From NCBI GenBank assembly GCA_964019335.1, contig OZ025660.1, forward strand, positions 434,001-498,000: DNA of 64,000 nt. The letters are read 5' to 3'. Source of the DNA: Diplonema japonicum (lineage: Eukaryota > Protista > Euglenozoa: Diplonemea). The position numbers and the translations under genes are program-made. The number at the start of each line of letters is the position of its first letter. The first letter of the stretch is position 1. The notes beneath the pieces are model-generated. The model saw only the letters and a program-made list of their open reading frames with translations. It ran no database searches and was not told where the DNA came from. Shown here piece after piece: positions 6,877-64,000 of this stretch.

Positions 6877-6944
6877 CAATCTCGCATCAGGACTGGAGGA
6901 TGGTATCTTTATTTGATAAAGGCCTTCAGTGGCACCCGTGCTGC
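6877..6944 (-). ncRNA. AGA-box H/ACA-like snoRNA family A1
   Basis: Single hairpin ending TGC-(G/A)AGA; pocket predicts target ACUGGA-PsiN-GUGGCA, similar to LSU ACUGGCUUGUGGCA; apical stem varies while pocket is invariant; copies 9223, 9651, 12150, 32173, 34649, 51342. Confidence 0.8.
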
Positions 6945-6970
6945 CCTTCTCCCTCCCTCCTACCCCTTAC

Positions 6971-7037
6971 ATGTCTCGCACCCCTCCAACGCCTCTTTCA
7001 TGTATGAAGAACGCGAAGTGGTGTTAATTAAGGGTGC
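6971..7037 (-). ncRNA. AGA-box H/ACA-like snoRNA family A2
   Basis: GCACCC...GGGTGC-GAGA hairpin; copies 9745, 23710, 32267, 39229, 52451. Confidence 0.75.
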
Positions 7038-7083
7038 TCTCCAGGCCTGTCCGGGTACGTTGGGAAGACAATTGTTTTTTTTT

Positions 7084-7178
7084 TCAGAAAGGGTTTGTGC
7101 AGAGCACCTATCCATCAAACACCTATCATCTGTGATGACAAGGTCAGAGACTCTAGTCTTTTGTGCTTTGATCATCAT
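7084..7178 (-). ncRNA. Box C/D snoRNA family CD1
   Basis: C ATGATGA, D' CTGA, internal hairpin, D CTGA; D' guide AGACTAGAGTC complementary to conserved LSU GACUCUAGUCU; copies 9868-9962, 32390-32484, 59913-60007, 63551-63645. Confidence 0.9.
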
Positions 7179-7233
7179 TCACAGCGTTGGTGTGTCCCCT
7201 TCGACACGGGTCATAAAAGCAAAAAGAACAAAG

Positions 7234-7298
7234 TAGTCTCACGCTGATAAAGCTCCCATTCCAAGCATGAAGTGCCCAACGGGTGGTATGTACAGCGT
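7234..7298 (-). ncRNA. AGA-box H/ACA-like snoRNA family A3
   Basis: ACGCTG...CAGCGT-GAGA hairpin with internal pocket; copies 10049, 21047, 23426, 32571, 38932, 52152, 60058. Confidence 0.8.
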
Positions 7299-7315
7299 TA
7301 GAAGAGTCGGAGACA

Positions 7316-7401
7316 TCAGAAGAGGTGTAGTTTGTTGATAATGTTCCATTTCACGCCCCCCCAGGGGGAGGTCATCTAACCGCAATATCGTGTCTCATCA
7401 T
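7316..7401 (-). ncRNA. Box C/D snoRNA family CD2
   Basis: C ATGATGA, D' ATGA, D CTGA; D guide CTACACCTCT complementary to LSU AGAGGUGUAG; copies 24001-24086, 52742-52827, 60166-60251. Confidence 0.85.
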
Positions 7402-7458
7402 CTGTCTGTTTAAGCCAATTACAAAACAGCAAAAAAACACGCGGAAAAAAAAAAGAAG

Positions 7459-7522
7459 AGTTCTCACCAGCACATCGAACCACATGCACCATGATGAGCT
7501 GCTGCGGTATTGCAATGCGGGT
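7459..7522 (-). ncRNA. AGA-box H/ACA-like snoRNA family A4
   Basis: Hairpin ending GGT-GAGA, upper stem ACCGCA/TGTGGT; copy 60300-60363. Confidence 0.7.
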
Positions 7523-7547
7523 TTCCTTCTGACACTCTCCAACGCTC

Positions 7548-7616
7548 TCATCTCCCGCCCACTTTCACCCTGCAGCACAAACAGAGTGTGAATGCTGCAA
7601 CGACAGCGGAGGGCGG
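7548..7616 (-). ncRNA. AGA-box H/ACA-like snoRNA family A5
   Basis: CCGCCC...GGGCGG-GAGA, upper stem TGCAGCA/TGCTGCA; copies 9332, 12276, 16546, 23067, 31949, 51468, 60391. Confidence 0.8.
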
Positions 7617-7651: not shown

Positions 7652-8377
7652 GTACAATTCAGTCAAAATTAAAAAAAGAAAAATACTCGAAGAACAACGA
7701 AGAGTCACCATTGGTGAGCAATGGTGGGAAAGATGCACAAATCACTGAAGGATTGAAGCCTATTAAGCTGTTGTGGCAGTCTTGTTGCTGCTTCAGCCAA
7801 TCTTGTGGTTGTATGAGTAAGGGCGTAAAGGCAGCTTCCCCACTTCAGGAGACCAGAGGAAGGAGGGGGGACTGGAAGAGGGACAAGAGGATATTCCTCA
7901 GAAACACTTTCGATAACAACCCTTCTGGTGAAACTGGATAGAGACACCCCTGCGGCCTTCGTCTTTTGCATTTGCTGTTAAAGACTACAGGGGAGCGGGG
8001 CCCACTCATGTAGAAGCTTGCGGCGGTGTCACCGACATCCCAGATGGCGAGGACAACGTGGTAGCCCGACTTGGAGGGGAGGGTGCAGGAGTGGGTCGTC
8101 ACCATCGGGGGCTTCACCATCCCGCCCGCCGCGATGCAGAAGGGAGCATCCTCGAAGCTGCCTCATAAAGGTCGAACCACTACCTGCTCTCATCAGCGCA
8201 TTGTGACTGCACCCCAAGGGTTATTGAGCCAGTAGGAGTAGGGCCAACGTCTACCCTGCCGTTGTGCATGGATGATATGAACTATATAAACAAAGACACC
8301 ACAGGCATTGCCTCACCATAGTCCAACATTGTTTTCAGTATTTACATGTGTAAGGGGGGCGAGAGCAGGGGTGGGGG
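7652..8377 (-). pseudogene. Mosaic remnant of the LPMO gene and of the 30839-31804 gene
   Basis: 7652-7870 patches of LPMO 3' flank and C-terminus; 8009-8163 near-exact LPMO coding piece ([12 protein letters not shown]...ASFY); 8253-8283 matches 31593-31623; 8306-8377 matches about 31781-31851 but the ATG is destroyed. Confidence 0.8.
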
Positions 8378-9017: not shown

Positions 9018-9443
9018 TTTATTTATGCGGGTTTTGAAAACTTGTAGGAAACACTGTATTGTGGTGTTGCTTCTTCTTATTTCCAGTTCCCCAAGAGAGG
9101 GAATAGGCTGCAGCCTTGTACAGCTTGCCAGTTTTAAAAACTACCTCTCTCCAATCTCGTTGCCCTCTCGTTCTTCCCTCTCCTTCCTTAACAGCTGTTC
9201 TCTCTCCCTCTTTCTTTCACTCCAATCTCGCATTAGGACTGGAGGATGGGATCTTTACAAGATAAAGGCCTTCCGTGGCACCCGTGCTGTTGTCGTCCTA
9301 CCCTCCTACCCCATCATTCAATTGAAGACATTGCTCTCCCGCCCACTTTCACCCTGCAGCACAAACAGAGTGTGACTGCTGCAACGACAGCGGAGGGCGG
9401 TGGCCATAAGGAACAGACACCGGGAAGGGAGATAAAAGGTTGG

Positions 9444-9510
9444 AGATCTTGTACCAGATAAAGGGAACCTGTGCAAGGTACGAGGCACCTCACAGGAGGG
9501 TTGCCGGTAC
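9444..9510 (-). ncRNA. AGA-box snoRNA family A6 (SNORA61-site-like)
   Basis: GTACCGG...CTGGTAC-AAGA; pocket predicts AAAGGGAA-PsiN-GGGUU, the conserved LSU motif around human 28S Psi2495; copies 23189-23255, 51927-51993. Confidence 0.85.
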
Positions 9511-9534
9511 TCCATCTCCCTCTCCTCTCTTTCT

Positions 9535-9601
9535 CTCTCTCGCATAGCTTCACAACCAGCACCCTATTCAGAGAGGGAACAGGCTGTTACAAGCTTGCTG
9601 C
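9535..9601 (-). ncRNA. AGA-box H/ACA-like snoRNA family A7
   Basis: GCA.AGCTT...AAGCT.TGC-GAGA hairpin; copies 23525, 39034, 52251. Confidence 0.7.
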
Positions 9602-10154
9602 AAGTTTTCAAAACAGCTGTTCTCTCTCTCTCTCCCTCTTTCTTTCACTCCAATCTCGCATCAGGACTGGAGGATGGTATCTTTATTTGATAAAGGCCTT
9701 CCGTGGCACCCGTGCTGCCCTTCTCCTTCCCTCCTACCCCTTACATGTCTCGCACCCCTCCAACGCCTCTTTCATGTATGAAGAACGCGAAGTGGTGTTA
9801 ATTAAGGGTGCTCTCCAGGCCTGTCCTGGTACGTTGGGAAAACAACTGTTTTTTTTTTTTTTTTTTTTCAGAAAGGGTTTGTGCAGAGCACCTATCCATC
9901 AAACACCTATCATCTGTGATGACAAGGTCAGAGACTCTAGTCTTTTGTGCTTTGATCATCATTCACAGCGTTGGTGTGTCCCCTTCGACACGGGTCATCA
10001 CTTCAAGAGACGAAAAAGGTAGCTCTTTTAAAAGCAAAAAGAACAAAGTAGTCTCACGCTGATAAAGCTCCCATTCCAAGCATGAGGTGCCCAACGGGTG
10101 GTATGTACAGCGTTGCGTTGCCTTGTCCCTCCACTCCAAGGAGAAGGGTGTGCA

Positions 10155-10243
10155 TCAGACGATGCCGTCTCACTGGTGTCTGCTCAGCACCAACAGAAGC
10201 CTGCCGGTTCATAAAATATAGGATCTAAGTGGTGAATCATCAT
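10155..10243 (-). ncRNA. Box C/D snoRNA family CD3
   Basis: C ATGATGA, C' GTGCTGA, D CTGA; D guide CGGCATCGT complementary to SSU-like ACGAUGCCG; copies 32677-32765, 51735-51823, 63962-end. Confidence 0.8.
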
Positions 10244-10763
10244 CTGCTCATTCCTTGGAAACTCTCTTGTTGGTTTCTCGATCCTTCCGTGTCTTTGTGT
10301 GTCCCCTCTTGGTTATCGTTGTATTTCGCGATCCCAGCCCACGACGGTACCCACCCAGCGTGTACAATTCAGTAAAAATAAAAAATACTCAAAAAAACAA
10401 CGGGAGTCACCATTTGGTGAGCGCAATGCACGTATCACCAGCTGTCCATTGGGAAGTTAAAACGAAAAGAAAGGTAAAAGAGAGTGAAAGAAAGGAGGGA
10501 GGGAAAAGTGTAACCGGACATGTGTCATGGTTACAAGGTATAATAATAGGGGAGGAGGGAGGGAAGCTCTCGGCCCACCACAGGTGGGCGAAGGGAATCA
10601 TTTTAATCAAATGTTTTTTTTTTTCCTTTTTTAAATTCTTTTTTCGAACAAAAAAGACACGATGCACAAGTCACAGAAGAAGAAGAATAAGAAGAGGAAG
10701 CCTAATAAGTTGGTATTGTTGCTGTCTTGTCCCAATTAAGAGAGTATGGCGTTGGTCCTCTTC

Positions 10764-11875: not shown

Positions 11876-11991
11876 TTCTCTTCTTTTTTTTTTTTTTTTT
11901 TTTTTTTTTTTGTTGTGTGGAAACTGTGGAGTGAAATAAATAGATACAGAGCACCCCTCCATTGGTCCTCGTGATGGGAAAAATGAATGGA

Positions 11992-12084
11992 TCAGTTTCC
12001 TTCTGTCATTTATGTGTTAAAGGGGAATCAGGAGACTGTGTCTTCATAGAATGGACCAATGTTCTTTAACTACGGTGTCATCAT
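11992..12084 (-). ncRNA. Box C/D snoRNA family CD4
   Basis: C ATGATGA, D' ATGA, hairpin AGAC-ACA-GTCT, D CTGA; D guide GACAGAAGGAA resembles the complement of the LSU AUUCCCACUGUC region; copies 20536-20628, 34491-34583, 38493-38585, 51184-51276, 59733-59825. Confidence 0.8.
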
Positions 12085-12376
12085 GTGTTTGCCCCTTCTC
12101 TCCCTTCATTGAAATTAAAGCTACTCAGGCCGCCTCTCTTTCTCTGCTCTTTTCTTGCATCAGGACTGGAGGATGGTATCTCTACTGCGAAAGGCCTTCC
12201 GTGGCACCCGTGCTGCTTCTTCTCGATTCCTATTACTTCATTCTACTCTTGTCATGCATTCTTCCCCCATTATTGTCATCTCCCGCCCACTTTCACCCTG
12301 CAGCACAAACAGAGTGTGACTGCTGCAACGACAGCGGAGGGCGGTGAGTAGAAAAGGTGCGCAAAAGCCTTAATGG

Positions 12377-12455
12377 TCAGAAGTCCTTGTTGTAAATCAT
12401 GAATTGAAAGATCAGAAGCAAGACTGGCATGTCGTGAAAGGGTCGTTGTCATCAT
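12377..12455 (-). ncRNA. Box C/D snoRNA family CD5 (snR61/SNORD38-like)
   Basis: C ATGATGA, D' CTGA, C' ATGATTT, D CTGA; D' guide GCCAGTCTTGCTT; D+5 rule points to the A of LSU AAGCA (yeast Am1133 equivalent); copies 16647-16725, 20910-20989, 38795-38874, 51565-51643. Confidence 0.85.
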
Positions 12456-12529
12456 CTTGGTGTTTGTGCGGGCAAAACATAGGGTAAGAGAACAAGTATC
12501 TTGTAGTCTCTCTTGGTCAGGGCAAACAC
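12452..12529 (-). ncRNA. Possible AGA-box hairpin RNA A8
   Basis: GTGTTTG...CAAACAC-CAAGA with AAGAGA/TCTCTT upper stem; AGA abuts the CD5 C box and pocket spacing is long; copy 16722-16799. Confidence 0.4.
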
Positions 12530-15910: not shown

Positions 15911-16109
15911 ATTTATGTTCAGTAAACCTGTGTGGTTGTGTCGTTACAAATTTGTGAAACGAAGAATTGGAATCGCCTTTTTGTCCTCACCCATGTGTCC
16001 TTGCTGCCGGAAATAAGCTCAAGAAAATATCGGTGGGCACTCTCCTTCATGCCCTTGCTGCCGAAGTCCCATCCTCCAGGAGCCTGGTTCCCTTTCCAGA
16101 GAATGGACA

Positions 16110-16197
16110 TCAGAACAGATCTTGGTTTGCGAATGGAATGGTTGTACACACTTGCACCCAAAGGTGCTTCATACGCCAGGTAAAGTGGTGTCATCAT
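16110..16197 (-). ncRNA. Box C/D snoRNA family CD6
   Basis: C ATGATGA, D' ATGA, D CTGA; D guide ACCAAGATCTG complementary to LSU CAGAUCUUGGU; D' guide CTTTACCTG complementary to LSU CAGGUAAAG; copies 20385-20472, 38343-38430, 59582-59669. Confidence 0.9.
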
Positions 16198-16799
16198 CTT
16201 GCCCCTTTGCCTACCTCCCCACCCCTCCATTGGTCCTCGTGATGGGAAAAACTCAAATTAACATGCAAACCCCTAAAGCGCTACTGTGGTTCTAGTGTCC
16301 AGGCGATATGGGGTTTAAATATGCATCCTTAAGAGGGGGTACTTGTGTTCACTGTGTGCCCCTACTATTCGAATACAGGAAATATCCTTCCTTGCTCTTG
16401 TTTGGAGTCTTTAGCACAATGAGTTTGTTCCATGACTGGAGGATGGTATCTCTACTGCGAAAGGCCTTCCGTGGCACCCGTGCTGCTTCTTCTCGATTCC
16501 TATTACTTCATTCTACTCTTGTCATGCATTCTTCCCCCATTATTGTCATCTCCCGCCCACTTTCACCCTGCAGCACAAACAGAGTGTGACTGCTGCAACG
16601 ACAGCGGAGGGCGGTGAGTAGAAAAGGTGCGCAAAAGCCTTAATGGTCAGAAGTCCTTGTTGTAAATCATGAATTGAAAGATCAGAAGCAAGACTGGCAT
16701 GTCGTGAAAGGGTCGTTGTCATCATCTTGGTGTTTGTGCGGGCAAAACATAGGGTAAGAGAACAAGTATCTTGTAGTCTCTCTTGGTCAGGGCAAACAC
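16110..16799 (-). ncRNA. snoRNA cluster D (CD6, partial A1, A5, CD5, A8?)
   Basis: Recurrent modules. Confidence 0.8.
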
Positions 16800-20185: not shown

Positions 20186-20384
20186 ATTTATGTTCAGTAA
20201 ACCTGTGTGGTTGTGTCGTTACAAATTTGTGAAACGAAGAATTGGAATCGCCTTTTTGTCCTCACCCATGTGTCCTTGCTGCCGGAAATAAGCTCAAGAA
20301 AATATCGGTGGGCACTCTCCTTCATGCCCTTGCTGCCGAAGTCCCATCCTCCAGGAGCCTGGTTCCCTTTCCAGAGAATGGACA

Positions 20385-21254
20385 TCAGAACAGATCTTGG
20401 TTTGCGAATGGAATGGTTGTACACACTTGCACCCAAAGGTGCTTCATACGCCAGGTAAAGTGGTGTCATCATCTTGCCCCTTTGCCTACCTCCCCACCCC
20501 TCCATTGGTCCTCGTGATGGGAAAAAATGAATGGATCAGTTTCCTTCTGTCATTTATGTGTTAAAGGGGAATCAGGAGACTGTGTCTTCATAGAATGGAC
20601 CAATGTTCTTTAACTACGGTGTCATCATGTTTGCTCCCTCCTCGGAATTGGTTGGGTTCACCTGTTTCCGACCAATGTTCTTTAACTACAGTGTCATCAT
20701 GCTTCGGTGTTGCTGCTGTCGGACGGTGCTTTGATCATCATTCACAGCGTTGGTGTCCCCTCTTCGGGAATTCGGGAGAAAGAAACATTATTTTAAAAGA
20801 CGAAAAAATCAGTTCCCTTCAAAGCAAAGAAAAGTGGAACAGTGTGACTGCTGCAACGACACGGAGGGCGAGAGTAGCCGGAAGAACGCGTGGGCAAAAG
20901 CCTTAATGGTCAGAAGTCCTTGTTTGTAAATCATGAATTGAAAGATCAGAAGCAAGACTGGCATGTCGTGAAAGGGTCGTTGTCATCATCCTGATGTTTA
21001 ATACATTTCTCCAGTTGGCAAAGAGAACAACGTAGTCAGAAAACAGTAGTCTCACGCTGATAAAGCTCCCATTCCAAGCATGAGGTGCCCAACGGGTGGT
21101 ATGTACAGCGTTGCTGCTCTTCACTTTTCTTACTTCTCTAAGTTTCTCAGTTTATTTTTCAAAAAAACACAGTTCTATCGCAGACCAGCCAACCCTGAAG
21201 GGCCGACCGACTAGGATCGGAGGTGACAGAATGGGTGTGTTGAGTTCTCATCAT
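20385..21254 (-). ncRNA. snoRNA cluster E (CD6, CD4, fragments of CD4/CD1/A5, CD5, A3, CD7)
   Basis: Recurrent modules plus fragments. Confidence 0.8.
21147..21254 (-). ncRNA. Box C/D snoRNA family CD7 (snR48/SNORD60-like)
   Basis: C RTGATGA, guide TTCTGTCACCT then D' CCGA (D+5 gives the G of LSU AGGUG, yeast Gm2793 equivalent), long internal hairpin, D CTGA; copies 59416-59523 and 5'-truncated 60495-60582. Confidence 0.75.
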
Positions 21255-21922
21255 GCAAAACAGGTCCCTCTTCTTTTTTCCCTTTTTACACGCGAAATTG
21301 GTGAGACATCAAAGGAAAAGGAAATGAAAATGAAAATGAAAATGAAAATGAAACTAAAAATAAAACAGATCCATCTGTGAGTGTAAATAGAAAGAAATAG
21401 GTAGAGGAGGGCAAGACCAGAGAGGGTGCTTTCGCTTGTGAGCTGAAGCCTCCCCTCTTGCTCTGATTGGGGTGCTAGCCTTCAAAGAGAAGAATAACAC
21501 AGCAAGCAACAAGGGAAGAAATCGAAGAATAAAATGGAATATCCTTTGAGGCGAAGGGAAAAAAAGAAAGACCAACTTGGCGATTCAAGTTTTTTATGAG
21601 CGTTTCGTTGCGTTCTATTCTTTTTGAAAAGTTAGCTGTTTTAAGAAGAAGATAGAAGCTATAACAAAAAGAGACAACATTCCATTAGAATGACACAAGT
21701 GGATGCAGGAAACCACACTGGCTACCCTTCCGTTGGCAGAGGACCCTTTTGGTTGATCCTGCATCTCCAAGCTATTTACCTTTTCCGGCACTTTGCATCT
21801 TTCCTTTTTCTCTATGTCCAAATGGACAGCAGGTGAATCACTTTTTGAAACAAACAATAAAAGAAGAGAGTGTTCCTTCTTTTCCGATGATGAAAAGACA
21901 AGGAAGAAAATAAAAAGAAAAC

Positions 21923-22937: not shown

Positions 22938-23320
22938 CTTTTTATTTTTGTGTATTGAAGATATCTGTATGGTAGTTGCGCTGTTCCTTCGGAAAGGCGT
23001 CGTTTGTTTTTCTTTTTTTAAAATCCGTGGCACCCGTGCTGCTTCCCTCTTTTCATTTTTGTCATTAGTTCTCCCGCCCACTTTCACCCTGCAGCACAAA
23101 CAGAGTGTGACTGCTGCAACGACAGCGGAGGGCGGTGACTACGAAGGAATAAACCACAGACACCGGGAAAGGAGACAAAAAAGGTTGGAGATCTTGTACC
23201 AGATAAAGGGAACCTGTGCAAGGTACGAGGCACCTCACAGGAGGGTTGCCGGTACTCTGTGTTCCTGTTTTCTTCTTGATGAGACTTTGCTTTTTCTTCT
23301 TTTTTTTTTTACTTCCTTCT

Positions 23321-23382
23321 TTCTCTCGCACCAGTATTATCCCGCAACCCTTACCACAAAGGGCACTGGTCCTTGATGGCTC
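23321..23382 (-). ncRNA. AGA-box H/ACA-like snoRNA family A9
   Basis: Hairpin ending TGGTGC-GAGA, CCCTT/AAGGG apical stem; copy 52047-52108. Confidence 0.6.
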
Positions 23383-23832
23383 TTCTTCCTTTCTGTTCTT
23401 TGCTTCAAAAGGCAGAGAAAAACAGTAGTCTCACGCTGATAAAGCTCCCATTCCAAGCATGAGGTGCCCAACGGGTGGTATGTACAGCGTTGCTGTTCTT
23501 CACTCTTCTTTTTCTTCATCTTCTCTCTCTCGCATAGCTTCACAACCAGCACCCTATTCAGAGAGGGAACAGGCTGTTACAAGCTTGCTGCAAGTTTTCA
23601 AACCAAACTGTGTTTTGTGTTTTCAGGTTTCAGTCTCGCAGGTTTTTGACCCTCACTTGAACCAGCAAACATGGGTTCGCAAGGAACACGAAACAGTGTG
23701 TGTGCCCACATGTCTCGCACCCCTCCAACGCCTCTTTCATGTATGAAGAACGCGAAGTGGTGTTAATTAAGGGTGCTCTCCTTCTTTTCGAGTATTCCCC
23801 TCCCCCAACCCCCTTCTTTTTTACCCCGCAAC

Positions 23833-23899
23833 GTATCTCACGCTGATAAAGCGCCCATTCCAAGCATCAACAGTGCCCAACGGGTGCCGATTACAGCGT
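23833..23899 (-). ncRNA. AGA-box snoRNA A3b (guide-altered paralogue of A3)
   Basis: Same stems as A3, different pocket; copies 39352-39418, 52574-52640. Confidence 0.7.
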
Positions 23900-24110
23900 T
23901 GCCGTTCTTTCTTTGCGGGGTATCGTGTTCTGCATTTTGTGAAGGTGCTGGCTTTCCCATTGTGGTGGTGCTTCTTCCCCCCCTTTCTTCATGGAAGACA
24001 TCAGAAGAGGTGTAGTTTGTTGATAATGTTCCATTTCACGCCCCCCCAGGGGGAGGTCATCTAACCGCAATATCGTGTCTCATCATCTGTCTCCGTGGGT
24101 CGTTCTTTTC

Positions 24111-24175
24111 TTCTCTCGCAAGAAAGCGTAGCTGGGCAGCGGATGCAGTCCTGCAGCCAGTTTAATAAATCTTGC
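24111..24175 (-). ncRNA. AGA-box snoRNA family A11 (SSU, SNORA20-site-like)
   Basis: GCAAGA...TCTTGC-GAGA; pocket predicts AAAGCGUA-PsiA-UUAAU, matching euglenozoan-type SSU CCAAAAGCGUAUAUUAAU, with Psi 15 nt from AGA; copy 52852-52916. Confidence 0.88.
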
Positions 24176-26686: not shown

Positions 26687-26689
26687 TTT

Positions 26690-34376: not shown

Positions 34377-34490
34377 TTCTCTTCTTTTTTTTTTTTTTTT
34401 TTTTTTTGTTGTTGTGTGGAAACTGTGGAGTGAAATAAATAGATACAGAGCACCCTTCCATTGGTCCTCGTGATGGGAAAAATGAATGGA

Positions 34491-34715
34491 TCAGTTTCCT
34501 TCTGTCATTTATGTGTTAAAGGGGAATCAGGAGACTGTGTCTTCATAGAATGGACCAATGTTCTTTAACTACGGTGTCATCATGTGTTTGCCCCTTCTCT
34601 CCCTTCATTGAAATTAAAGCTACTCAGGCCGCCTCTCTTTCTCTGCTCTTTTCTTGCATCAGGACTGGAGGATGGTATCTCTACTGCGAAAGGCCTTCCG
34701 TGGCACCCGTGCTGC
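34491..34715 (-). ncRNA. snoRNA cluster H (CD4,A1)
   Basis: Cluster C with A5-CD5-A8 deleted. Confidence 0.8.
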
Positions 34716-38134: not shown

Positions 38135-38342
38135 ATTTATGTTCAGTAAACCTGTGTGGTTGTGTCGTTACAAATTTGCGAAAAGAAGAATTGGAATCTC
38201 CTTTTTGTCCTCACCCATATGTCCTTGCTGCCGAAAGTAAGCTCAAGAAAATATCGGTGGCACTCTCCTTCCGCCACCCATATGCCCTTGCTGCCGAGGT
38301 CCCATCCTCCAGGAGCCTGGTTCCCTTTCCAGAGAATGGACA

Positions 38343-39548: not shown

Positions 39549-40090
39549 GAGAACGTATTTCACGGGCCCTGTAGGAGTCTGGCAAAAAGGGCGACGAGAA
39601 CGGCGTCTGGGTTGGGTGAGGGGTGGAGGATGGTGGAACTACGTTCCATGCCGGTTACGCTTAGGCAATGCAATGCTGTTCGACGCAAACGAAACGACCG
39701 AGAAGTGGCAGAAAGCACTCCTGACGGGGCTGGTGGAGAGAACTCCCTTGAGCCATCGGCTGATTACGCAGTCATGGCAACGCTATAGCAGGTTCTAAAA
39801 AAAAGAAAAAAAAAAGAGAAAGAGAGAGAAAAAAGAAGAAGAAAAAAACGATTGAACGAAAGGGAGAATGGATGAGAGAACGAGAGGCTACACCTGGAAA
39901 AATAGCGGGAACCAAGTTTTGTATGTTTTCTTTTTTTTTCTTTCTTTCTTTTACGCATTTCTTCTTGCCATGACGCAGCACATCGGAATATCGAGTTAGG
40001 GGGGCATCCCTCGTGATCATTTGAATGACAAGTTTCACTCTTTACTGTCTTTGAGGGTTTCTTCTTTTTTCTCATCTTCAGTTTTGGGCT

Positions 40091-50981: not shown

Positions 50982-51094
50982 TTCTCTTCTTCTTTTTTTT
51001 TTTTTTTTTTTTTTTTTTTGTTGTGTGGAAACTGTGGAGTGAAAATAGAGACAGAGTAGCGAGCCCCCTCTTCCAACAAGAGGATGAATGGATC

Positions 51095-52916
51095 AAAGGT
51101 GCTTCATACACCAGGTAAAGTGGTGTCATCATCTTGCCCCTTTGCCTACCCCATTGGTCCCCGTGATGGGAAAAATGAATGGATCAGTTTCCTTCTGTCA
51201 TTTATGTGTTAAAGGGGAATCAGGAGACTGTGTCTTCATAGAATGGACCAATGTTCTTTAACTACAGTGTCATCATGTGTTTGCCCCTTCTCTCCCTTCA
51301 TTGAAATTAAAACTACTCAGGCCGCCTCTCTTTCTCTGCTCTTTTCTTGCATCAGGACTGGAGGATGGTATCTCTACTGCGAAAGGCCTTCCGTGGCACC
51401 CGTGCTGCTTCTTCTCGATTCCTATTACTTCATTCTACTCTTGTCATTCATTCTACCCTCATTATTGTCATCTCCCGCCCACTTTCACCCTGCAACACAA
51501 ACAGAGTGTGACTGCTGCAACGACAGCGGAGGGCGGTGAGTCGACTGCGCAAAAGCCTTAATGGTCAGAAGTCCTTGTTGTAAATCATGAATTGAAAGAT
51601 CAGAAGCAAGACTGGCATGTCGTGAAAGGGTCGTTGTCATCATCTTGGGGGGGGGGCAAGTAAACAGAGTAGTCGGAGGCGGCGTTTACAGCGTTTCGTT
51701 GCCTGTCCCTCCACTCCAAGGAGAAGGGTGTGCATCAGACGATGCCGTCTCACTGGTGTCTGCTCAGCACCAACAGAAGCCTGCCGGTTCATCAAAAATA
51801 GGATCTAAGTGGTGAATCATCATCTGCTCATTCCTTGGAGGGTTGCTTGCTGGTTGTCTAATTCCCTTTTCTTTCGAAGGGCATAAACCATAAACCACAG
51901 ACACCGGGAAGGAGACAAAAGGTTGGAGATCTTGTACCAGATAAAGGGAACCTGTGCAAGGTACGAGACACCTCACAGGAGGGTTGCCGGTACTCTGTGT
52001 TCCTGTTTTCTTCTTGCTTTTTCTTCTTTTTTTTTTACTTCCTTCTTTCTCTCGCACCAGTATTATCCCGCAACCCTTACCACAAAGGGCACTGGTCCTT
52101 GATGGCTCTTCTTCCTTTCTGTTCTTTGCTTCAAAAGGCAGAGAAAAACAGTAGTCTCACGCTGATAAAGCTCCCATTCCAAGCATGAGGTGCCCAACGG
52201 GTGGTATGTACAGCGTTGCTGTTCTTCACTCTTCTTTTTCTTCATCTTCTCTCTCTCGCATAGCTTCACAACCAGCACCCTATTCAGAGAGGGAACAGGC
52301 TGTTACAAGCTTGCTGCAAGTTTTCAAACCAAACTGTGTTTTGTGTTTTCAGGTTTCAGTCTCGCAGGTTTTTGACCCTCACTTGAACCAGCAACATGGG
52401 TTCGCAAGGAACACGAAACACTGCTGCGCTCGTGTGTTGTGTGTGCCCACATGTCTCGCACCCCTCCAACGCCTCTTTCATGTATGAAGAACGCGAAGTG
52501 GTGTTAATTAAGGGTGCTCTCCTTCTTTTCGAGTATTCCCCTCCCCCAACCCCCTTCTTTTTTACCCCGCAACGTATCTCACGCTGATAAAGCGCCCATT
52601 CCAAGCATCAACAGTGCCCAACGGGTGCCGATTACAGCGTTGCCGTTCTTTCTTTGCGGGGTATCGTGTTCTGCATTTTGTGAAGGTGCTGGCTTTCCCA
52701 TTGTGGTGGTGCTTCTTCCCTCCCTTTCTTCATGGAAGACATCAGAAGAGGTGTAGTTTGTTGATAATGTTCCATTTCACGCCCCCCCAGGGGGAGGTCA
52801 TCTAACCGCAATATCGTGTCTCATCATCTGTCTCCGTGGGTCGTTCTTTTCTTCTCTCGCAAGAAAGCGTAGCTGGGCAGCGGATGCAGTCCTGCAGCCA
52901 GTTTAATAAATCTTGC
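51095..52916 (-). ncRNA. snoRNA cluster J (half CD6, CD4,A1,A5,CD5,CD3,A6,A9,A3,A7,A10,A2,A3b,CD2,A11)
   Basis: Longest cluster, 14 intact modules. Confidence 0.85.
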
Positions 52917-59415: not shown

Positions 59416-60582
59416 TCATAGTTCTTTTCAAAAAAACACAGTTCTATCGCAGACCAGCCAACCTTGAAGGGCCGACCGACTAGGATCGGAGGTGACAGAA
59501 TGGGTGTGTTGAGTTCTCATCACAGAGTTCCCATTCGTAGGAAAGTCCCCGCTTCTCCCAAAAACAGAAAAAAAGGAGACATCAGAACAGATCTTGGTTT
59601 GCGAATGGAATGGTTGTACACACTTGCACCCAAAGGTGCTTCATACGCCAGGTAAAGTGGTGTCATCATCTTGCCCCTTTGCCTACCTCCCCACCCCTCC
59701 ATTGGTCCTCGTGATGGGAAAAAATGAATGGATCAGTTTCCTTCTGTCATTTATGTGTTAAAGGGGAATCAGGAGACTGTGTCTTCATAGAATGGACCAA
59801 TGTTCTTTAACTACGGTGTCATCATGCTTCGGTGTTGCTGCTGTCGGGCACAACACAGATCCTTGAGACAGCAAAAAGAAAAGCAACTGTGCTTGGGTGT
59901 TGTTGCTGCTTCTCAGAAAGGGTTTGTGCAGAGCACCTATCCATCAAACACCTATCATCTGTGATGACAAGGTCAGAGACTCTAGTCTTTTGTGCTTTGA
60001 TCATCATTCACAGCGTTGGTGTGTCCCCTTCGACGCAAACCTTGCGCTCAAAGCAAGTAGTCTCACGCTGATAAAGCTCCCATTCCAAGCATGAGGTGCC
60101 CAACGGGTGGTATGTACAGCGTTGCGTTGCCTGTCCCTCCACTCCAAGGAGAAGGGTCGGAGACATCAGAAGAGGTGTAGTTTGTTGATAATGTTCCATT
60201 TCACGCCCCCCCAGGGGGAGGTCATCTAACCGCAATATCGTGTCTCATCATCTGTCTGCTGAAACCAAACAAATCAAAAAGAAACAAAAAGAAAAGCAGC
60301 GTTCTCACCAGCACATCGAACCACATGCACCATGATGAGCTGCTGCGGTATTGCAATGCGGGTTTCCTACTGCAACGCTCCTTGGCACTCTCATCTCCCG
60401 CCCACTTTCACCCTGCAGCACAAACAGAGTGTGACTGCTGCAACGACAGCGGAGGGCGGTGGAATATCTGGATGAAAATGTTCATTCCTTCTTGTCAGTC
60501 TCTTTTCAAAAAAACACAGTTCTATCGCAGACCAGCCAACCCTGAAGGGCTGACCGACTAGGATCGGAGGTGACAGAATGGG
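59416..60582 (-). ncRNA. snoRNA cluster K (CD7,CD6,CD4,CD1,A3,CD2,A4,A5, truncated CD7)
   Basis: Recurrent modules. Confidence 0.85.
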
Positions 60583-61032
60583 CTCTCAAAACCAGGACAG
60601 TATATCTATCAATTTCTTCAAAAAAGAAAAGAAACAAGGTACAGGAGGGGAGGGGAGAAAAGTGAGTTCTCCTTTCGTTTCTTTGAGACAAAAAAAAAGA
60701 ACAAGCTTAAATATTATAGGTGGGGTTGGGTGAGACACAGCTCACGCCTTGTTCTTGGTGAATGAACAATAAAAAACATATAAGGGGGGGAAAAGATTCA
60801 CTAAAGAAAATTTTTAAAATAACAAAAAAGAATCTTACGAACATACCCATAAAGGGAATAGCGGTGGGGGTAAGAGTAAAGGATTCTTCTTCTTATTCTT
60901 TTCTTGTTTTTTTTTTTTTTTTTTGTGTGTATTCTTTTTTTTTTTTGTGGGGTTTTTTTTTTTTGTGGGTTTTTTTTTTTTTGTGGGTGTGTTTTTTGTT
61001 TAATAAGGTCAGCACTACAACTACTGCTAAAG

Positions 61033-63408
61033 CTAAATGTCAAAGTACACGGTGGAACTGGGCGGTGTCATCTTAACCTCCTGAGAAGGCACAGGAGCTT
61101 TCTCCAAGTCACTCAACAGCATTTCCCGAGGAGCGGTCGTGGTCATGGTAGAGGTTCTCTTCTTGTTGTACACTGTGAGGGCGATGGCGGAACCAATGCA
61201 CAGGGCACCCAAACCACCTGCGAGATACAGCCACGGCATCGAGAAGGAGGAAGAGGAAGAGGAGGAGGAGGAGCCAGACTCGTCATCAGGTTGCGGGGCA
61301 GGAACGCTGACCTTTGTGACAGGCTTCACAACAAGGGAACCCTCGTCCCCGTCCACCAAAGGTCCCTTCCCCTCAGCTGCCTCCTTCACCGCCTCTTCCA
61401 CTTCCGCCTCGATCTTGTCCGCATCTTTCCCCTCAATACGGTACTCCACGAACACACCAGTGTCGCTGTCATCCTCCACCTGCTGGACTCCGGCACCTCT
61501 GTAACGACGCCTCTCCTCGTTCAGGTAGTCCATGTTCCATGAACGGTCCACTTCTACCGCATAGTTCCTCCTCTCCCTCGGTGTCGGACGCCTGTTCCCC
61601 GCCTTCAACACACCAACAGCAGTCACCACCAACCAGTCGGGCCTCGACCTCAGCCACCTTGAAGCCTTCATCATAGACATCCTGAACTTCCTCAGGAAGT
61701 CCCTCGGCCTCTGCATCACATAGTTCCTGTTACCTCTGAACCTCAAGCACTTCTCCATCTCAGGAGAAGGTGTGGGGTTTGGTGTCGACATTCTTGGAGC
61801 TGCGGTGTTCGGGGCTGAGGTCTCTCTCTGCTCGCTGCCAGGGGATGAAGTCACTTTCTGTTCACCACCAGGGGATGAGGTTTCTTTCTGCTCGCCACCA
61901 GGGGATGAAGTCACTTTCTGCTCGCTGCCAGGGGATGAAGTCTCCTTCTGTTCGCCATTAGGGCTTGGAGTCTCACCGTTGCCCATTTCACCACCAGGGG
62001 ATGGAGTCTTACCGTTGCCCATCTCACCACCAGGGGACGGAGTCTCGCCGTTGCCTTCTTCACTACCAGGAGATGGAGTCCTGCCGTTGCCTTCTTCACC
62101 ACCAGGGGATGGAGTCCTACCGCCGTTGCCTTCCTCACCGCCAGGGGATGGAGTCTCGCCGTTGCCTTCCTCACCACCAGGGGACGGACCTTCTTCACCA
62201 CCAGGAGATGGACCCTCTTCGGTACCTTCTTCAGTTCCCTCTTCGGTGCCCTCTTCTGTTCCCTCCTCGGTGCCCTCTTCTTTTCCCTCTTCACGGTCTT
62301 TTGCGGCTCCCTGTTCACCTTTGTTGCCATTGTTGCCCTCAGGGTTGTTGTTGCCCCCTTCTTCACCGTTGCCGGTGCCCCCTTCTTCACCGCCAGTTGG
62401 TGGAGGCATACCGTTACCACCTTCTTCACCACCAGTGGGTGGAGGCATACCGTTACCACCTTCCTCACCACCAGGGGATGGAGTCCTTCCGTTACCACCC
62501 TCTTCACCACCAGGGGATGGAGTCCTGCCGTTGCCACCTTCCTCACCACCAGGGGATGGAGTCCTTCCGTTACCACCCTCTTCACCACCAGGGGATGGAG
62601 TCCTGCCGTTACCACCCTCTTCACCACCAGGAGATGGAGTCCTACCGTTGCCACCTTCTTCACCGCCGGGAGATGGAGTCCTACCGTTGCCACCCTCCTC
62701 ACCACCAGGAGATGGAGTCCTACCGTTGCCACCCTCTTCACCGCCAGGGGATGGAGTCCTACCGTTGCCCTCTTCACCACCAGGGGATGGAGTCCTGCCG
62801 TTGCCTTCCTCACCACCAGGGGATGGAGTCTTACCGTTGCCCTCTTCACCACCAGGGGAATCCGTGTTCTGCTCACCGTTCGGACTCGGGGTGTTCTGCT
62901 GACCGTTCGGACTAGGAGTGTTCTGTTGACCATTAGGACTCGGGGTGTTCTGCTGGCCGTTAGGACTGGGAGTGTTCTGTTGGCCATTAGGACTAGGAGT
63001 GTTCTGCTGACCATTAGGGCTTGGAGTAGCAGGGGCTCGGGTATCAGGAGTTGAAGTAAAAGGAGCAGAAGTGTCAGGGGCCCGAGTATCAGGAGGCGAA
63101 GTAGCAGGGGCCCGAGTATCAGGGATTGCTGTGTCAGGGGACAAACTCTCACCCGGTTTACACTTCCTCGGGGGGTAGGTCTTCTTCCCGTAGCTCTTCT
63201 TCCCGTAGTAGGTCTTCTTCCCGTAGTACGTCTTCTTCCCGTAACTCTTCTTCCCATAATAGCTCTTCCCGTAGTACTTGCTACTGTAGTGGTTCCCGTT
63301 GCCGTAGCCATAGTTGTATCCCCCCACTTGGCTGCCATAGTAGTGTGCGCTGGCTGGTGCCACCATCGAGGCGGCACACAGCACTAGAAGCAAGCTCCTC
63401 GACCTCAT
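61033..63408 (-). CDS. Mucin-like repeat membrane protein, copy 4
   Basis: Same architecture, fewer repeats (791 aa). Confidence 0.85.
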   Translation of the reverse strand: MRSRSLLLVLCAASMVAPASAHYYGSQVGGYNYGYGNGNHYSSKYYGKSYYGKKSYGKKTYYGKKTYYGKKSYGKKTYPPRKCKPGESLSPDTAIPDTRAPATSPPDTRAPDTSAPFTSTPDTRAPATPSPNGQQNTPSPNGQQNTPSPNGQQNTPSPNGQQNTPSPNGQQNTPSPNGEQNTDSPGGEEGNGKTPSPGGEEGNGRTPSPGGEEGNGRTPSPGGEEGGNGRTPSPGGEEGGNGRTPSPGGEEGGNGRTPSPGGEEGGNGRTPSPGGEEGGNGRTPSPGGEEGGNGRTPSPGGEEGGNGRTPSPGGEEGGNGMPPPTGGEEGGNGMPPPTGGEEGGTGNGEEGGNNNPEGNNGNKGEQGAAKDREEGKEEGTEEGTEEGTEEGTEEGTEEGPSPGGEEGPSPGGEEGNGETPSPGGEEGNGGRTPSPGGEEGNGRTPSPGSEEGNGETPSPGGEMGNGKTPSPGGEMGNGETPSPNGEQKETSSPGSEQKVTSSPGGEQKETSSPGGEQKVTSSPGSEQRETSAPNTAAPRMSTPNPTPSPEMEKCLRFRGNRNYVMQRPRDFLRKFRMSMMKASRWLRSRPDWLVVTAVGVLKAGNRRPTPRERRNYAVEVDRSWNMDYLNEERRRYRGAGVQQVEDDSDTGVFVEYRIEGKDADKIEAEVEEAVKEAAEGKGPLVDGDEGSLVVKPVTKVSVPAPQPDDESGSSSSSSSSSFSMPWLYLAGGLGALCIGSAIALTVYNKKRTSTMTTTAPREMLLSDLEKAPVPSQEVKMTPPSSTVYFDI

Positions 63409-63550
63409 ATTTATGTTCAGTAAACCTGTGTGGTGTCATCACTTTTATGAGATTGGGAACAAAATAATTGGATCATGTCCTTTGTGTTGCAAGGCACAGA
63501 GGAGGGTCTACTTCACAAGACAGGTGTGCTTCGGGTGGTGTTGCTGCTTC

Positions 63551-64000
63551 TCAGAAAGGGTTTGTGCAGAGCACCTATCCATCAAACACCTATCATCTGT
63601 GATGACAAGGTCAGAGACTCTAGTCTTTTGTGCTTTGATCATCATTCACAGCGTTGGTGTGTCCCCTTCGACACGGGTCATCACTTCAAGGAATTTCCTT
63701 GAAGGCAACGAGATTTTCTGGACGAACTGAAAGATCACAGGGGAAGTAGAAGCAAGACAGGCATGTCGTGAAAGGGTCGTTGTCACCATCTTGTCAAAAA
63801 AGAAAAGGAAACCTTTTCCTCAAAAAAGCAAAAGAGAACCACTGGAGTCTCACGCTGATAAAGCTCCCATTCCAAGCATGAGGTAAGTAAACAGAGTAGT
63901 CGGAGGCGGCGTTTACAGCGTTTCGTTGCCTGTCCCTCCACTCCAAGGAGAAGGGTGTGCATCAGACGATGCCGTCTCACTGGTGTCTGCTCAGCACCAA
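63551..64000 (-). ncRNA. snoRNA cluster L (CD1, degenerate CD5, A3 variant, CD3 cut by window end)
   Basis: Recurrent modules. Confidence 0.75.

What the first reader, a model, noticed from the sequence alone, without database searches (positions are those of the whole stretch)
6877..64000. Combinatorially shuffled snoRNA cassette arrays woven through a polycistronic gene cluster
Seen: about 18 distinct 60-110 nt modules recur in 12 clusters, always in the same orientation. On the minus strand 7 carry RUGAUGA...CUGA boxes and about 11 are single hairpins ending in an AGA box. Spacers are low-complexity and variable while module cores are nearly invariant. No two clusters have the same composition: A3 is followed by CD2, CD3, CD7 or A7, and A5 by A6, CD5, CD7 or gene debris. 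Known: trypanosomatids and Euglena have clustered C/D and single-hairpin AGA snoRNAs, usually as repeats of a fixed unit. Inference: here the cluster behaves as a modular, recombining library interleaved with mRNA genes and processed from the same polycistron. I know of no description of this in diplonemid-like genomes.
Basis: partly seen in the sequence, partly recalled or inferred. Interest (0 to 1): 0.9.

Follow-up and report, generated by a model that had tools for sequence, protein, structure and literature searches.

The report
Mosaic snoRNA gene clusters in a diplonemid
The repeated 60-120-nt modules are real genes for small guide RNAs that direct chemical modification of the cell's own ribosomal RNA; they sit between protein genes in differently composed clusters because the region has been repeatedly duplicated, deleted and recombined, which is a variant of a layout already known from trypanosomes and Euglena.

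Summary
Observation confirmed. The window holds 100 module instances (83 full, 17 truncated), all on the minus strand, in 12 clusters of 12 different compositions. They comprise 7 box C/D types, 12 single-hairpin AGA-box types and 2 other conserved elements.

The snoRNA reading is well supported for C/D. Nine perfect matches of 11 nt or more to the organism's own rRNA were found, against none on three control strands, and eight abut a D or D' box. For the AGA hairpins the shape is uniform, but only H8 and H2 have rRNA targets above shuffled-rRNA controls.

"Combinatorial shuffling" is overstated. Across 258 kb, 22 clusters are all different, but the orders are mosaics of shared sub-blocks. Only one module (H3) shows all four neighbour combinations, and junctions often cut through modules. 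This points to segmental duplication, deletion and some unequal exchange. Modules differ by 1.0%, against 8.7% for neighbouring non-coding DNA.

All detected copies but one lie in one unidirectional stretch of one contig, about 358 kb long. One public run that behaves like RNA has contigs running through modules and spacers.

I found no paper on diplonemid snoRNAs. This scan has already noted similar arrays on other DNA of this genome (s1-867402, s1-856392, s1-862126). Verdict: a new variant of the euglenozoan snoRNA-cluster layout, of moderate interest.

The parts
6877..7616 (-). Cluster A. Order 5'->3' on the minus strand: H1 H2 CD1 H3 CD2 H4 H5. Lies upstream of the SnoaL-like gene 6441-6779.
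   Evidence: Pfam SnoaL_2 hit
9223..10247 (-). Cluster B: CD6 X2 H3 CD2 H4 H5 H6 H7 H1 H5-variant. Lies upstream of the second SnoaL-like gene 8679-9017.
11990..12458 (-). Cluster C: CD3 H1 H5b CD4. Lies upstream of the LPMO gene 10811-11962.
   Evidence: LPMO_10 hit
15975..16728 (-). Cluster D: CD3 H1 H5b(truncated), then a 180-nt unique insert, then CD5 X1. Lies upstream of the repeat-protein gene 13310-15910.
20250..21256 (-). Cluster E: CD7 H3 CD3 H1(trunc) CD2(trunc) CD4(trunc) CD4 CD5 X1. Lies upstream of the repeat-protein gene 17555-20185.
   Evidence: The truncated junction 20733-20947 is covered by single contigs in runs X2 and X12.
23024..24175 (-). Cluster F: H10 CD1 H3b H4 H8 H6 H3 H9 H7 H1 H5b(trunc). 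It ends 58 nt upstream of the inferred 5' end (about 22965) of the downstream mRNA.
31875..32769 (-). Cluster G: CD6 X2 H3 CD2 H4 H5 H6(trunc)|H7(trunc) H1 CD2(trunc). H6 and H7 are fused at 32100/32102.
34489..34713 (-). Cluster H: H5b CD4. CD3 and H1 were lost by a deletion of about 285 nt with 1 nt of microhomology.
   Evidence: The deletion was read directly by comparing the sequence with cluster C.
38200..39549 (-). Cluster I: CD1(3' fragment) H3b H4 H8 H6 H3 CD3 H1(trunc) CD2(trunc) CD4 CD5 X1.
51094..52916 (-). Cluster J, the largest: H10 CD1 H3b H4 H8 H6 H3 H9 H7 CD6 X2 CD3 H1 H5b CD4 CD5(trunc). Lies upstream of the LPMO gene 49932-50981.
   Evidence: Its specific CD3-H1 spacer appears in a contig of run X1 (table 5c).
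59440..60581 (-). Cluster K: CD7(5'-truncated) H1 H2 CD1 X2 H3 CD2 CD4 CD5 CD7(D box degenerate).
   Evidence: Its H3-CD2 spacer appears in a contig of run X2 (table 5c).
63551..64000 (-). Cluster L, cut by the window end: ...CD6 X2 H3(trunc) CD3(trunc) CD2. It continues upstream to C13:499143 with H10 CD1 H3b H4 H8 H6 H3 H9 H7.
7312..7405 (-). CD1, reference copy. A box C/D RNA with two guides, aimed at LSU C1934 (D') and LSU G2524 (D).
7083..7182 (-). CD2, reference copy. The D' guide AGACTAGAGTC pairs with LSU GACUCUAGUCU and points to U2494. It gives a weak match to SNORD52.
   Evidence: (E=0.003, 26.9 bits, below the gathering score)
12376..12458 (-). CD3, reference copy. The D' guide makes 12 Watson-Crick and 2 G-U pairs with LSU 3945-3958 (rDNA numbering) and points to A1200.
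11990..12086 (-). CD4, reference copy. Its two guides target sites 16 nt apart, LSU U2387 and C2403.
59577..59672 (-). CD5, reference copy. Guides point to LSU C1060 (14-nt match) and G1503 (12-nt match).
10151..10247 (-). CD6, reference copy. The D guide makes a 14-nt perfect match to SSU and points to U1237.
21143..21256 (-). CD7, reference copy. A long C/D RNA of about 114 nt with an internal hairpin. It has a 14-nt perfect match to LSU (rDNA 5660-5673) that is not followed by a canonical D' box.
7548..7616 (-). H1, AGA-box single hairpin, the most abundant type (19 full copies in 258 kb). No significant rRNA target was found.
7459..7523 (-). H2, AGA-box hairpin. It shows 13 bp of bipartite pairing around SSU U1821 (rDNA 2011), 14 nt from AGA.
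7234..7299 (-). H3, AGA-box hairpin, 17 near-identical copies. It is the only module found with all four neighbour combinations.
23833..23900 (-). H3b, a paralogue of H3. It differs in the 5' pocket strand and the apical loop.
6971..7040 (-). H4, AGA-box hairpin. All 12 copies are identical.
6877..6942 (-). H5, AGA-box hairpin. The paralogue H5b (reference 12150-12214) differs in the apical part.
9535..9604 (-). H6, AGA-box hairpin. The candidate target LSU CACA-U-CUGUUACA did not exceed the shuffled-rRNA null.
9444..9510 (-). H7, AGA-box hairpin, fold z-score -3.4.
23631..23694 (-). H8, AGA-box hairpin. It pairs on both sides of the U in SSU UUUGAC-U-CAACACGGGG (rDNA 1595 = SSU 1405), 14 nt from AGA.
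   Evidence: score 13.5; null 95th percentile 12, maximum 13
23321..23376 (-). H9, AGA-box hairpin.
24111..24175 (-). H10, AGA-box hairpin.
10120..10150 (-). X2, a conserved 27-31-nt mini-hairpin ending in ACA. It sits between CD6 or CD1 and H3. Role unknown.
15975..16105 (-). X1, a conserved 131-nt element between CD5 and the repeat-protein genes. It is probably the 5' UTR or splice-acceptor region rather than a snoRNA.
7769..8162 (-). Gene debris between clusters A and B: LPMO gene fragments, 98.7% identical to the internal LPMO coding sequence.

Best explanation
The modules are multi-copy genes for rRNA-modification guide RNAs. Seven are box C/D types (2'-O-methylation guides). Twelve are single-hairpin AGA-box H/ACA-like types (pseudouridylation guides).

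They fill the intergenic gaps of one long unidirectional gene array. They are most likely transcribed with the neighbouring mRNA genes as part of a polycistronic Pol II precursor and then cut and trimmed to their protein-protected cores.

The differing cluster compositions are a historical mosaic. A stretch of contig C13 about 358 kb long has repeatedly undergone three kinds of event:
- duplication of 'gene plus flanking snoRNA block' segments;
- imprecise deletions that cut through modules;
- occasional unequal exchange inside an identical module, with H3 the clear case.

The mature-RNA cores stay almost identical through purifying selection and probably gene conversion, while the spacers drift or are replaced.

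**Shown here:** boxes, folds, rRNA complementarity, orientation, mosaic structure, truncations, the conservation contrast, and confinement to one region.

**Inferred:** co-transcription and processing, gene conversion, and the order of events.
For: **C/D modules.**
- Nine perfect complementarities of 11 nt or more to the organism's own rDNA, against 0, 0 and 0 on the reverse, complement and reverse-complement control strands.
- Eight of the nine end 0-2 nt upstream of a CTGA or ATGA box.
- CD3 adds a box-anchored duplex of 12 Watson-Crick and 2 G-U pairs.
- CD2 gives a weak SNORD52 match.

**AGA hairpins.**
- All 12 fold as stem / internal loop / stem / apical loop, followed by AGA. All fold z-scores are negative, from -0.8 to -3.4.
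- Sequence conservation among copies stops exactly at AGA; the 3 nt after it vary.
- H8 and H2 have bipartite rRNA targets 14 nt from AGA that exceed the 95th percentile of shuffled-rRNA controls.

**Orientation.** 234 of 234 instances in 258 kb are on the minus strand. So are 80 long ORFs, against 2 independent plus-strand ORFs.

**Expression.**
- Run X1 has uneven depth: 0-400 overall, 245 on the unique gene, and 54-160 on the multi-copy modules. It therefore behaves like RNA, not DNA.
- Its contigs tile cluster F through the spacers and include the spacer specific to cluster J.
- One mRNA-like contig covers 21370-22965, which leaves clusters E and F outside that mRNA.

**Mosaic structure.**
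- 22 clusters with 22 different compositions, and 83 distinct adjacencies among 212.
- Only H3 shows all four neighbour combinations.
- H3 flanks fall into discrete, unrelated classes that break at the module edges.
- 17 truncated instances.
- 44 of 99 long-duplication endpoints lie within 60 nt of a module, while such positions make up 11% of the region.

**Conservation.** Differences are 1.0% in modules, 6.9% in coding sequence and 8.7% in other non-coding sequence.

**Confinement.** All but one of 255 matches (157 + 98) lie on C13:329-687 kb, minus strand.
Against: - No small-RNA data were available. Mature 60-120-nt species, their ends and their abundance are not shown.
- The kind of every run is unrecorded. 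I inferred that X1 is RNA from its depth pattern.
- Only 2 of 12 AGA hairpins have rRNA targets above the null. A looser search did not separate real rRNA from controls (12 hits against 5-10).
- The lower stem of H8 is not clean in the register its target needs.
- The 14-nt rRNA match of CD7 is not followed by a recognisable D' box.
- Rfam gave no hit at gathering score.
- Gene conversion cannot be separated from recent duplication plus selection with these data.
Confidence: 0.8

Rival explanations
1. True cassette shuffling. A dedicated or ongoing recombination process joins intact snoRNA cassettes at their ends and so generates new cluster orders as a 'library'.
For: - No two clusters are alike.
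- Homology between H3 copies with different neighbours stops at the module edges.
- The same adjacency (H3->CD3, H3->CD2) occurs with unrelated spacers.
- H3 shows all four neighbour combinations.
Against: - 20 of 21 modules show only tree-like neighbour patterns.
- Long sub-blocks are shared intact between clusters.
- 17% of instances are cut inside the module.
- The truncated junction of cluster E is identical in run X2 and also present in a diverged relative, X12. The arrangement is therefore inherited and stable.
Confidence: 0.08
2. Assembly artefact. The differing orders come from mis-joining of repeats in the assembly.
For: Modules of 66-100 nt that are 98-100% identical are the kind of repeat that can confuse assemblers.
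Against: - The contig is 807 kb long in a 132-contig assembly.
- Cluster-specific junctions and spacers recur in independent runs from different studies: the E truncated junction in X2 and X12, the K H3-CD2 spacer in X2, and the J CD3-H1 spacer in X1.
- Unique spacers separate modules, so most adjacencies are anchored by unique sequence.
Confidence: 0.03
3. Dispersal by retroposition. Mature snoRNAs were reverse-transcribed and inserted, as with snoRNA retrogenes in mammals. This would explain homology that ends at the RNA termini.
For: - Homology stops at module edges.
- Earlier notes of this scan describe active LINE elements in this genome.
Against: - All but one of 255 matches lie in one 358-kb stretch, all in one orientation. 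Retroposition would scatter copies in both orientations.
- No poly(A) tails or target-site duplications are seen at the module ends.
Confidence: 0.04
4. The modules are not snoRNAs. They are some other repeat, such as SINE or MITE pieces or regulatory elements, that happen to carry box-like motifs.
For: Rfam gave no gathering-level hit. Most AGA hairpins have no significant target.
Against: - rRNA complementarity placed next to the boxes, with zero matches on the control strands.
- A uniform hairpin-plus-AGA architecture in 12 of 12.
- Conservation limited to the predicted RNA bodies.
- No inverted-orientation copies.
Confidence: 0.03

Closest known systems
Trypanosomatid snoRNA gene clusters (Trypanosoma brucei, Leishmania major)
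   Same: - Clusters mix C/D and single-hairpin AGA-box H/ACA-like genes.
- They lie in Pol II polycistronic units and are processed from long precursors.
- Clusters are repeated and may recur elsewhere on the same chromosome (PMC2613932).
- T. brucei snoRNA precursors are polyadenylated (PMC11613528). This fits the presence of cluster sequence in an mRNA-type library.
   Different: - Here the repeats are not copies of a fixed unit. All 22 clusters read differ, many hold truncated genes, and they are interleaved with duplicated protein genes over about 358 kb of one contig.
- AGA hairpins outnumber C/D types, 12 to 7.
- The organism is a diplonemid according to earlier notes of this scan. I did not verify that.
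Euglena gracilis tandem snoRNA clusters (Moore and Russell 2012; cited from my own knowledge, paper not held in the library)
   Same: Dense clusters of C/D and single-hairpin AGA-type guides, polycistronic expression, and extensive local duplication giving rise to isoforms.
   Different: The Euglena clusters are described as tandem repeats of a unit. Here the clusters are dispersed between mRNA genes and each is a different mosaic.
SNORD52 / yeast snR78 family (for CD2)
   Same: A C box followed by a guide against the conserved LSU sequence GACUCUAGU, next to a D' box. There is a weak Rfam match. The same C-box-guide-D' pattern occurs in 94 metagenome stretches.
   Different: The score of 26.9 bits is below the family's gathering score of 45. 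That the target is equivalent to yeast Um2421 rests on my memory of the yeast sequence.
snR35 / SNORA13 (for H8)
   Same: Predicted to guide pseudouridylation of the U in the SSU sequence UUUGAC-U-CAACACGGG. SNORA13/snR35 performs the first step of the m1acp3-pseudouridine at human 18S U1248 (PMC12976135). That this U is the same position rests on my own knowledge of the sequence context.
   Different: H8 is a single hairpin with AGA rather than a double hairpin with H and ACA boxes. No sequence-level family match was found, and its lower stem is unclear.
Intronic snoRNA arrays elsewhere in this genome
   Same: The same organism, repeated mixed arrays, and the earlier agent also judged them not to be a spreading cassette.
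   Different: Those arrays sit in giant introns. Here clusters E and F lie outside the one mRNA-like contig I could place, so they look intergenic.

Membership tests
Box C/D snoRNA | C box (RUGAUGA) near the 5' end and D box (CUGA) near the 3' end | tested here: met
   Present in all 7 types. For CD7 both boxes are conserved in 9 of 11 copies.
Box C/D snoRNA | An antisense element of 10 nt or more to rRNA, ending 1-2 nt upstream of D or D' (fifth-nucleotide rule) | tested here: met
   Met by CD1-CD6, with 0 matches of 11 nt or more on three control strands. The 14-nt match of CD7 is not next to a canonical D' box.
Box C/D snoRNA | Short terminal stem joining the 5' and 3' ends | tested here: inconclusive
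   Read directly from the sequence: 3-4 bp are visible for CD1 (GACA/TGTC), CD5 and CD6 (GCA/TGC). None is obvious for CD3.
Box C/D snoRNA | Discrete stable RNA of 60-120 nt bound by fibrillarin, Nop56/58 and Snu13 | not testable with these tools
   Only contigs of public runs were available.
Euglenozoan single-hairpin H/ACA-like (AGA-box) snoRNA | Single hairpin made of stem I, pocket loop, stem II and apical loop (PMC2613932) | tested here: met
   Minimum-free-energy folds show this in 12 of 12.
Euglenozoan single-hairpin H/ACA-like (AGA-box) snoRNA | AGA box directly after the hairpin, 3 nt from the 3' end | tested here: met
   AGA is present 1-2 nt after stem I in 12 of 12. Conservation among copies ends at AGA and the next 3 nt vary. 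The actual RNA 3' end was not measured.
Euglenozoan single-hairpin H/ACA-like (AGA-box) snoRNA | Bipartite pocket complementarity flanking a target U about 14-15 nt from the box | tested here: inconclusive
   H8 (score 13.5) and H2 (score 13) exceed the null 95th percentile at distance 14. The other ten do not.
Euglenozoan single-hairpin H/ACA-like (AGA-box) snoRNA | Dependence on and binding by CBF5/dyskerin | not testable with these tools
   Needs immunoprecipitation or knock-down.
Trypanosomatid-type snoRNA gene cluster | Mixed C/D and H/ACA-like genes in one cluster, in the same orientation as the surrounding polycistron | tested here: met
Trypanosomatid-type snoRNA gene cluster | Transcribed as a polycistronic precursor | tested here: inconclusive
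   Contigs of the RNA-like run X1 span modules plus spacers. The run's kind is not on record, and contigs cannot prove a single transcript.
Trypanosomatid-type snoRNA gene cluster | Repeats of a fixed cluster unit | tested here: not met
   22 clusters with 22 different compositions, and 83 distinct adjacencies.

The most novel reading that the evidence does not exclude
A unidirectional chromosomal domain of about 358 kb acts as one concerted-evolution unit for about 19 snoRNA species. Gene conversion keeps the dispersed copies identical. The same directly repeated modules serve as substrates for unequal crossing-over. That crossing-over drives copy-number expansion and decay of the interleaved secreted-protein genes (AA10 LPMO, repeat proteins, SnoaL-like). 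On this reading the snoRNA genes shape a carbohydrate-enzyme gene family and are not merely passengers.
Probability: 0.25. Interest if true: 0.65.

Novelty: new variant of a known kind. Interest (0 to 1): 0.45.

Why it matters
- It gives a first concrete catalogue of diplonemid rRNA-modification guides: 19 types, with 9 predicted methylation sites and 2 candidate pseudouridine sites that can be tested directly.
- It extends the single-hairpin AGA-box design and the polycistronic cluster layout from kinetoplastids and euglenids to the third large euglenozoan group. This supports an origin in their common ancestor.
- The mosaic, truncated and region-confined arrangement is a clear natural example of how multi-copy small-RNA genes evolve by duplication, deletion and homogenisation.
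- It raises a testable idea: such repeats may promote the amplification of neighbouring protein genes.

Tried and rejected
- **Rfam at gathering score:** no hit in the window. At E<=1 on clusters J and K the only meaningful lead was SNORD52 for CD2; the others were noise.
- **Loose H/ACA target search:** it did not separate real rRNA from control strands, 12 hits against 5-10. After tightening the search and adding shuffled controls, only H8 and H2 stand. The H6 target (score 11) is below the null and uses bases that pair with each other in the fold, so I dropped it to a lead.
- **My first 'H12' AGA hairpin:** alignment of 11 copies showed it to be the inner hairpin of a long C/D RNA, CD7.
- **Four-combination test for free shuffling:** positive for H3 only.
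- **Metagenome scan with the CD2 C-box-guide-D' pattern:** 94 stretches, none carrying any other module. No relatives were obtained, so no cross-species covariation could be done.
- **Run X2:** depth over intact modules is 30-125 times that of the unique gene, against roughly 16-25 assembled copies. It could be total RNA, or DNA with summed variant contigs. I could not decide, so I did not use it as expression evidence.
- **Using truncated fragments to test for gene conversion:** rejected, because short fragments are only detected when they are near-identical.
- The reads call used 4201 letters.

Full report
**Setting.** The window is G000:C13:434001-498000, in a 62.5-Mb assembly of 132 contigs. 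Earlier notes of this scan call the organism a diplonemid, probably Diplonema japonicum. I did not verify the name. All credible genes in the window are on the minus strand. They include three AA10 LPMO genes, four repeat-rich protein genes of about 790-876 aa, two SnoaL-like genes, a cyclophilin gene and a kinase-ankyrin gene. Self-comparison shows segmental duplications of 0.4-4.2 kb at 83-99.8% identity.

**Check of the observation.** I read every repeated intergenic stretch on the minus strand, with its copy depth printed underneath. From this I defined 21 reference modules. Mapping them back gave 100 instances, 83 full and 17 truncated, all on the minus strand, in 12 clusters with 12 different compositions. 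Seven modules carry C and D boxes. Twelve are hairpins of 56-70 nt followed by AGA. So is the claim of 'invariant cores, variable spacers'. Inside long duplicated segments the modules differ at 1.0% of columns, coding sequence at 6.9% and other non-coding DNA at 8.7%.

**The C/D modules.** I fetched the organism's own rDNA unit as L005 (SSU 191-2260, LSU 2750-6229).
- The seven C/D modules contain nine perfect complementarities of 11-14 nt to it. The reverse, complement and reverse-complement strands give none.
- Eight of the nine end 0-2 nt upstream of a CTGA or ATGA box, which is the position the fifth-nucleotide rule requires.
- A box-anchored search adds a duplex for CD3 with 12 Watson-Crick and 2 G-U pairs, and yields nine predicted methylation sites.
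- CD4 targets two sites 16 nt apart. CD1, CD2 and CD4 all aim at one LSU stretch of about 150 nt (rDNA 5133-5281).
- CD2 gives a sub-threshold match to SNORD52 (E=0.003).
- CD7 is an unusually long C/D RNA with an internal hairpin. Its 14-nt LSU match is not followed by a canonical D' box.

**The AGA hairpins.**
- All twelve fold as stem I, internal loop, stem II and apical loop, followed 1-2 nt later by AGA. Fold z-scores run from -0.8 to -3.4. This is the consensus described for trypanosomatid H/ACA-like RNAs (PMC2613932).
- Among up to 19 copies of a type, sequence identity ends exactly at AGA. The three nucleotides after it vary freely. Differences inside the module fall mostly in apical loops. 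This places the 3' functional boundary where the family definition puts it.
- Target prediction is weaker. A loose search was uninformative. With a required stem-II closure and shuffled-rRNA controls, only two exceed the null 95th percentile. H8 scores 13.5 around the U of SSU UUUGAC-U-CAACACGGGG. H2 scores 13 around SSU U1821. Both targets lie 14 nt from AGA.
- From my own knowledge, the H8 site is the helix-31 uridine that SNORA13/snR35 converts as the first step of m1acp3-pseudouridine. The snoRNA-site link is documented in PMC12976135. The sequence equivalence is my recollection.
- The lower stem of H8 is not clean in the register its target needs.

**Expression.** The run search found ten runs of one organism that hold half or more of cluster J's sampled words, plus several small-share holders. 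None has a recorded kind. I laid four runs on 20200-24400, which covers clusters E and F.
- Run X1 cannot be genomic DNA. Depth is 245 on the unique gene, 54-160 on modules that exist in 5-19 or more genomic copies, and 0 on 20200-20340.
- One 1664-nt contig covers 21370-22965 with short non-genomic ends. This looks like the mRNA of gene 21615-23099. Cluster F then lies 58 nt upstream of that mRNA's 5' end, and cluster E about 115 nt downstream of its 3' end.
- X1 contigs of 237-517 nt tile cluster F through modules and spacers. One contig carries the cluster-J-specific CD3-H1 spacer.
- This fits precursor transcripts. T. brucei snoRNA precursors are known to be polyadenylated (PMC11613528).
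- It is not proof of mature small RNAs. The RNA nature of X1 is my inference.

**Arrangement beyond the window.**
- Clusters J and A, used as queries against the whole assembly, gave 157 and 98 matches. All but one lie on C13 between 329 and 687 kb, on the minus strand.
- I read C13:320-578 kb, 258 kb in total. It contains 234 instances, all on the minus strand, in 22 clusters with 22 different compositions.
- It also contains 80 long minus-strand ORFs against two independent plus-strand ORFs.

**How the mosaic arose.**
- The orders share long sub-blocks. Among 212 adjacencies there are 83 kinds.
- For 20 of 21 modules the predecessor/successor pairs are tree-like. Only H3 shows all four combinations of two predecessors and two successors.
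- The 17 H3 copies are virtually identical. Their flanks fall into discrete, mutually unrelated classes that break at the module edges. The spacer class leading to CD3 occurs behind different left flanks. That requires at least one exchange within or at H3.
- Many junctions cut through modules: H1, CD2 and CD4 in E and I; the H6|H7 fusion in G; H3 and CD3 in L; H5b in D and F. Cluster H lost CD3-H1 by a deletion with 1 nt of microhomology.
- LPMO gene fragments lie between clusters A and B.
- Endpoints of long duplications are four-fold enriched next to modules, 44 of 99 against 11% of the region.
- The truncated junction of cluster E is present unchanged in run X2. It is also present, with 7 differences, in a related organism whose orthologous gene differs by about 2-4% (X12). 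It is therefore old and stable.

Together these results indicate segmental duplication, imprecise deletion and occasional unequal exchange. They do not indicate cassette-precise or ongoing shuffling.

**Why the cores stay uniform.** Module cores are near-identical next to genes that are 5-9% diverged. Diverged paralogues also exist: H3b, H5b, and an H6 form at 84%. So not every position is rigidly constrained. This suggests that gene conversion acts in addition to selection, but I cannot separate the two.

**Comparison with what is known.** Mixed C/D plus AGA-hairpin clusters inside polycistrons, repeated and sometimes present at a second site on the same chromosome, are textbook for trypanosomatids (PMC2613932). 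From my own knowledge they are also known in Euglena. What differs here is the lineage. Full-text searches for snoRNA with diplonemid or Diplonema found no description. The lack of a fixed repeat unit also differs, with every cluster a different and often damaged mosaic. So does the confinement of the whole family to one unidirectional domain of about 358 kb, interleaved with amplified protein genes. Other readers of this scan noted similar arrays on other pieces of this genome, and one follow-up reached a similar verdict for intronic arrays. The layout therefore seems to be a general feature of this genome.

**Limits.**
- No small-RNA or modification data were available.
- Run kinds are unrecorded.
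- Ten AGA hairpins are orphans.
- The 578-687 kb part was not read.
- The metagenome scan gave no relatives usable for covariation.

Noticed in passing
window 10811-11962, 33324-34376, 49932-50981 (minus strand); fragments at 7769-8162: Three copies of a gene with a bacterial-type AA10 LPMO domain (Pfam LPMO_10, E=6e-45), plus a broken fourth copy. Each intact copy is preceded by a snoRNA sub-block ending in CD4 or CD5. More copies lie elsewhere in C13:389-559 kb.
   Followed up: partly
window 13310-15910, 17555-20185, 35513-38134, 61033-63408 (minus strand): Four paralogous ORFs of 790-876 aa, built largely of 27-, 36- and 39-nt tandem repeats, with no Pfam hit. Each is preceded by the conserved 131-nt element X1 and CD5.
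   Followed up: no
window 10120-10150 and 9 further copies in C13:391-556 kb: X2, a conserved mini-hairpin of 27-31 nt (CCCTTCTCC / GGAGTGGAGGG) ending in ACA. It always sits between a C/D gene (CD6 or CD1) and H3. It is too short for a normal H/ACA guide. It might be a processing signal or a remnant.
   Followed up: partly
window 21143-21256 (CD7) against rDNA L005:5660-5673: A 14-nt perfect complementarity to LSU rRNA lies inside a long C/D RNA but is not followed by a recognisable D' box. An internal 45-nt hairpin follows instead.
   Followed up: partly
window 20200-24400, run X2: Summed contig depth over intact modules is 30-125 times that of the neighbouring unique gene. The assembly holds roughly 16-25 copies of each. 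Either this run is total RNA with abundant snoRNAs, or the real genome holds more copies than were assembled.
   Followed up: no
window 26000-31000: An AT-rich stretch (GC 0.33-0.44) with low-complexity A/T runs that match on both strands. It separates the cyclophilin gene from gene 30839-31804 and holds no snoRNA modules.
   Followed up: no
window 23815-23915, 39335-39435, 52555-52655: H3b is enclosed by an extra outer pairing, CCCCGCAA ... TTGCGGGG, that H3 lacks. This may be an extended precursor stem.
   Followed up: no
C13:530.6-556.4 kb (loci L021-L023): Three clusters about 11.9 kb apart, starting at 532282, 544050 and 556339, have very similar composition. This indicates a recent tandem triplication of a unit of about 12 kb.
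   Followed up: partly
rDNA L005:5133-5281: Four guides from three different C/D genes of this locus (CD4 twice, CD2, CD1) aim at one LSU rRNA stretch of about 150 nt.
   Followed up: no
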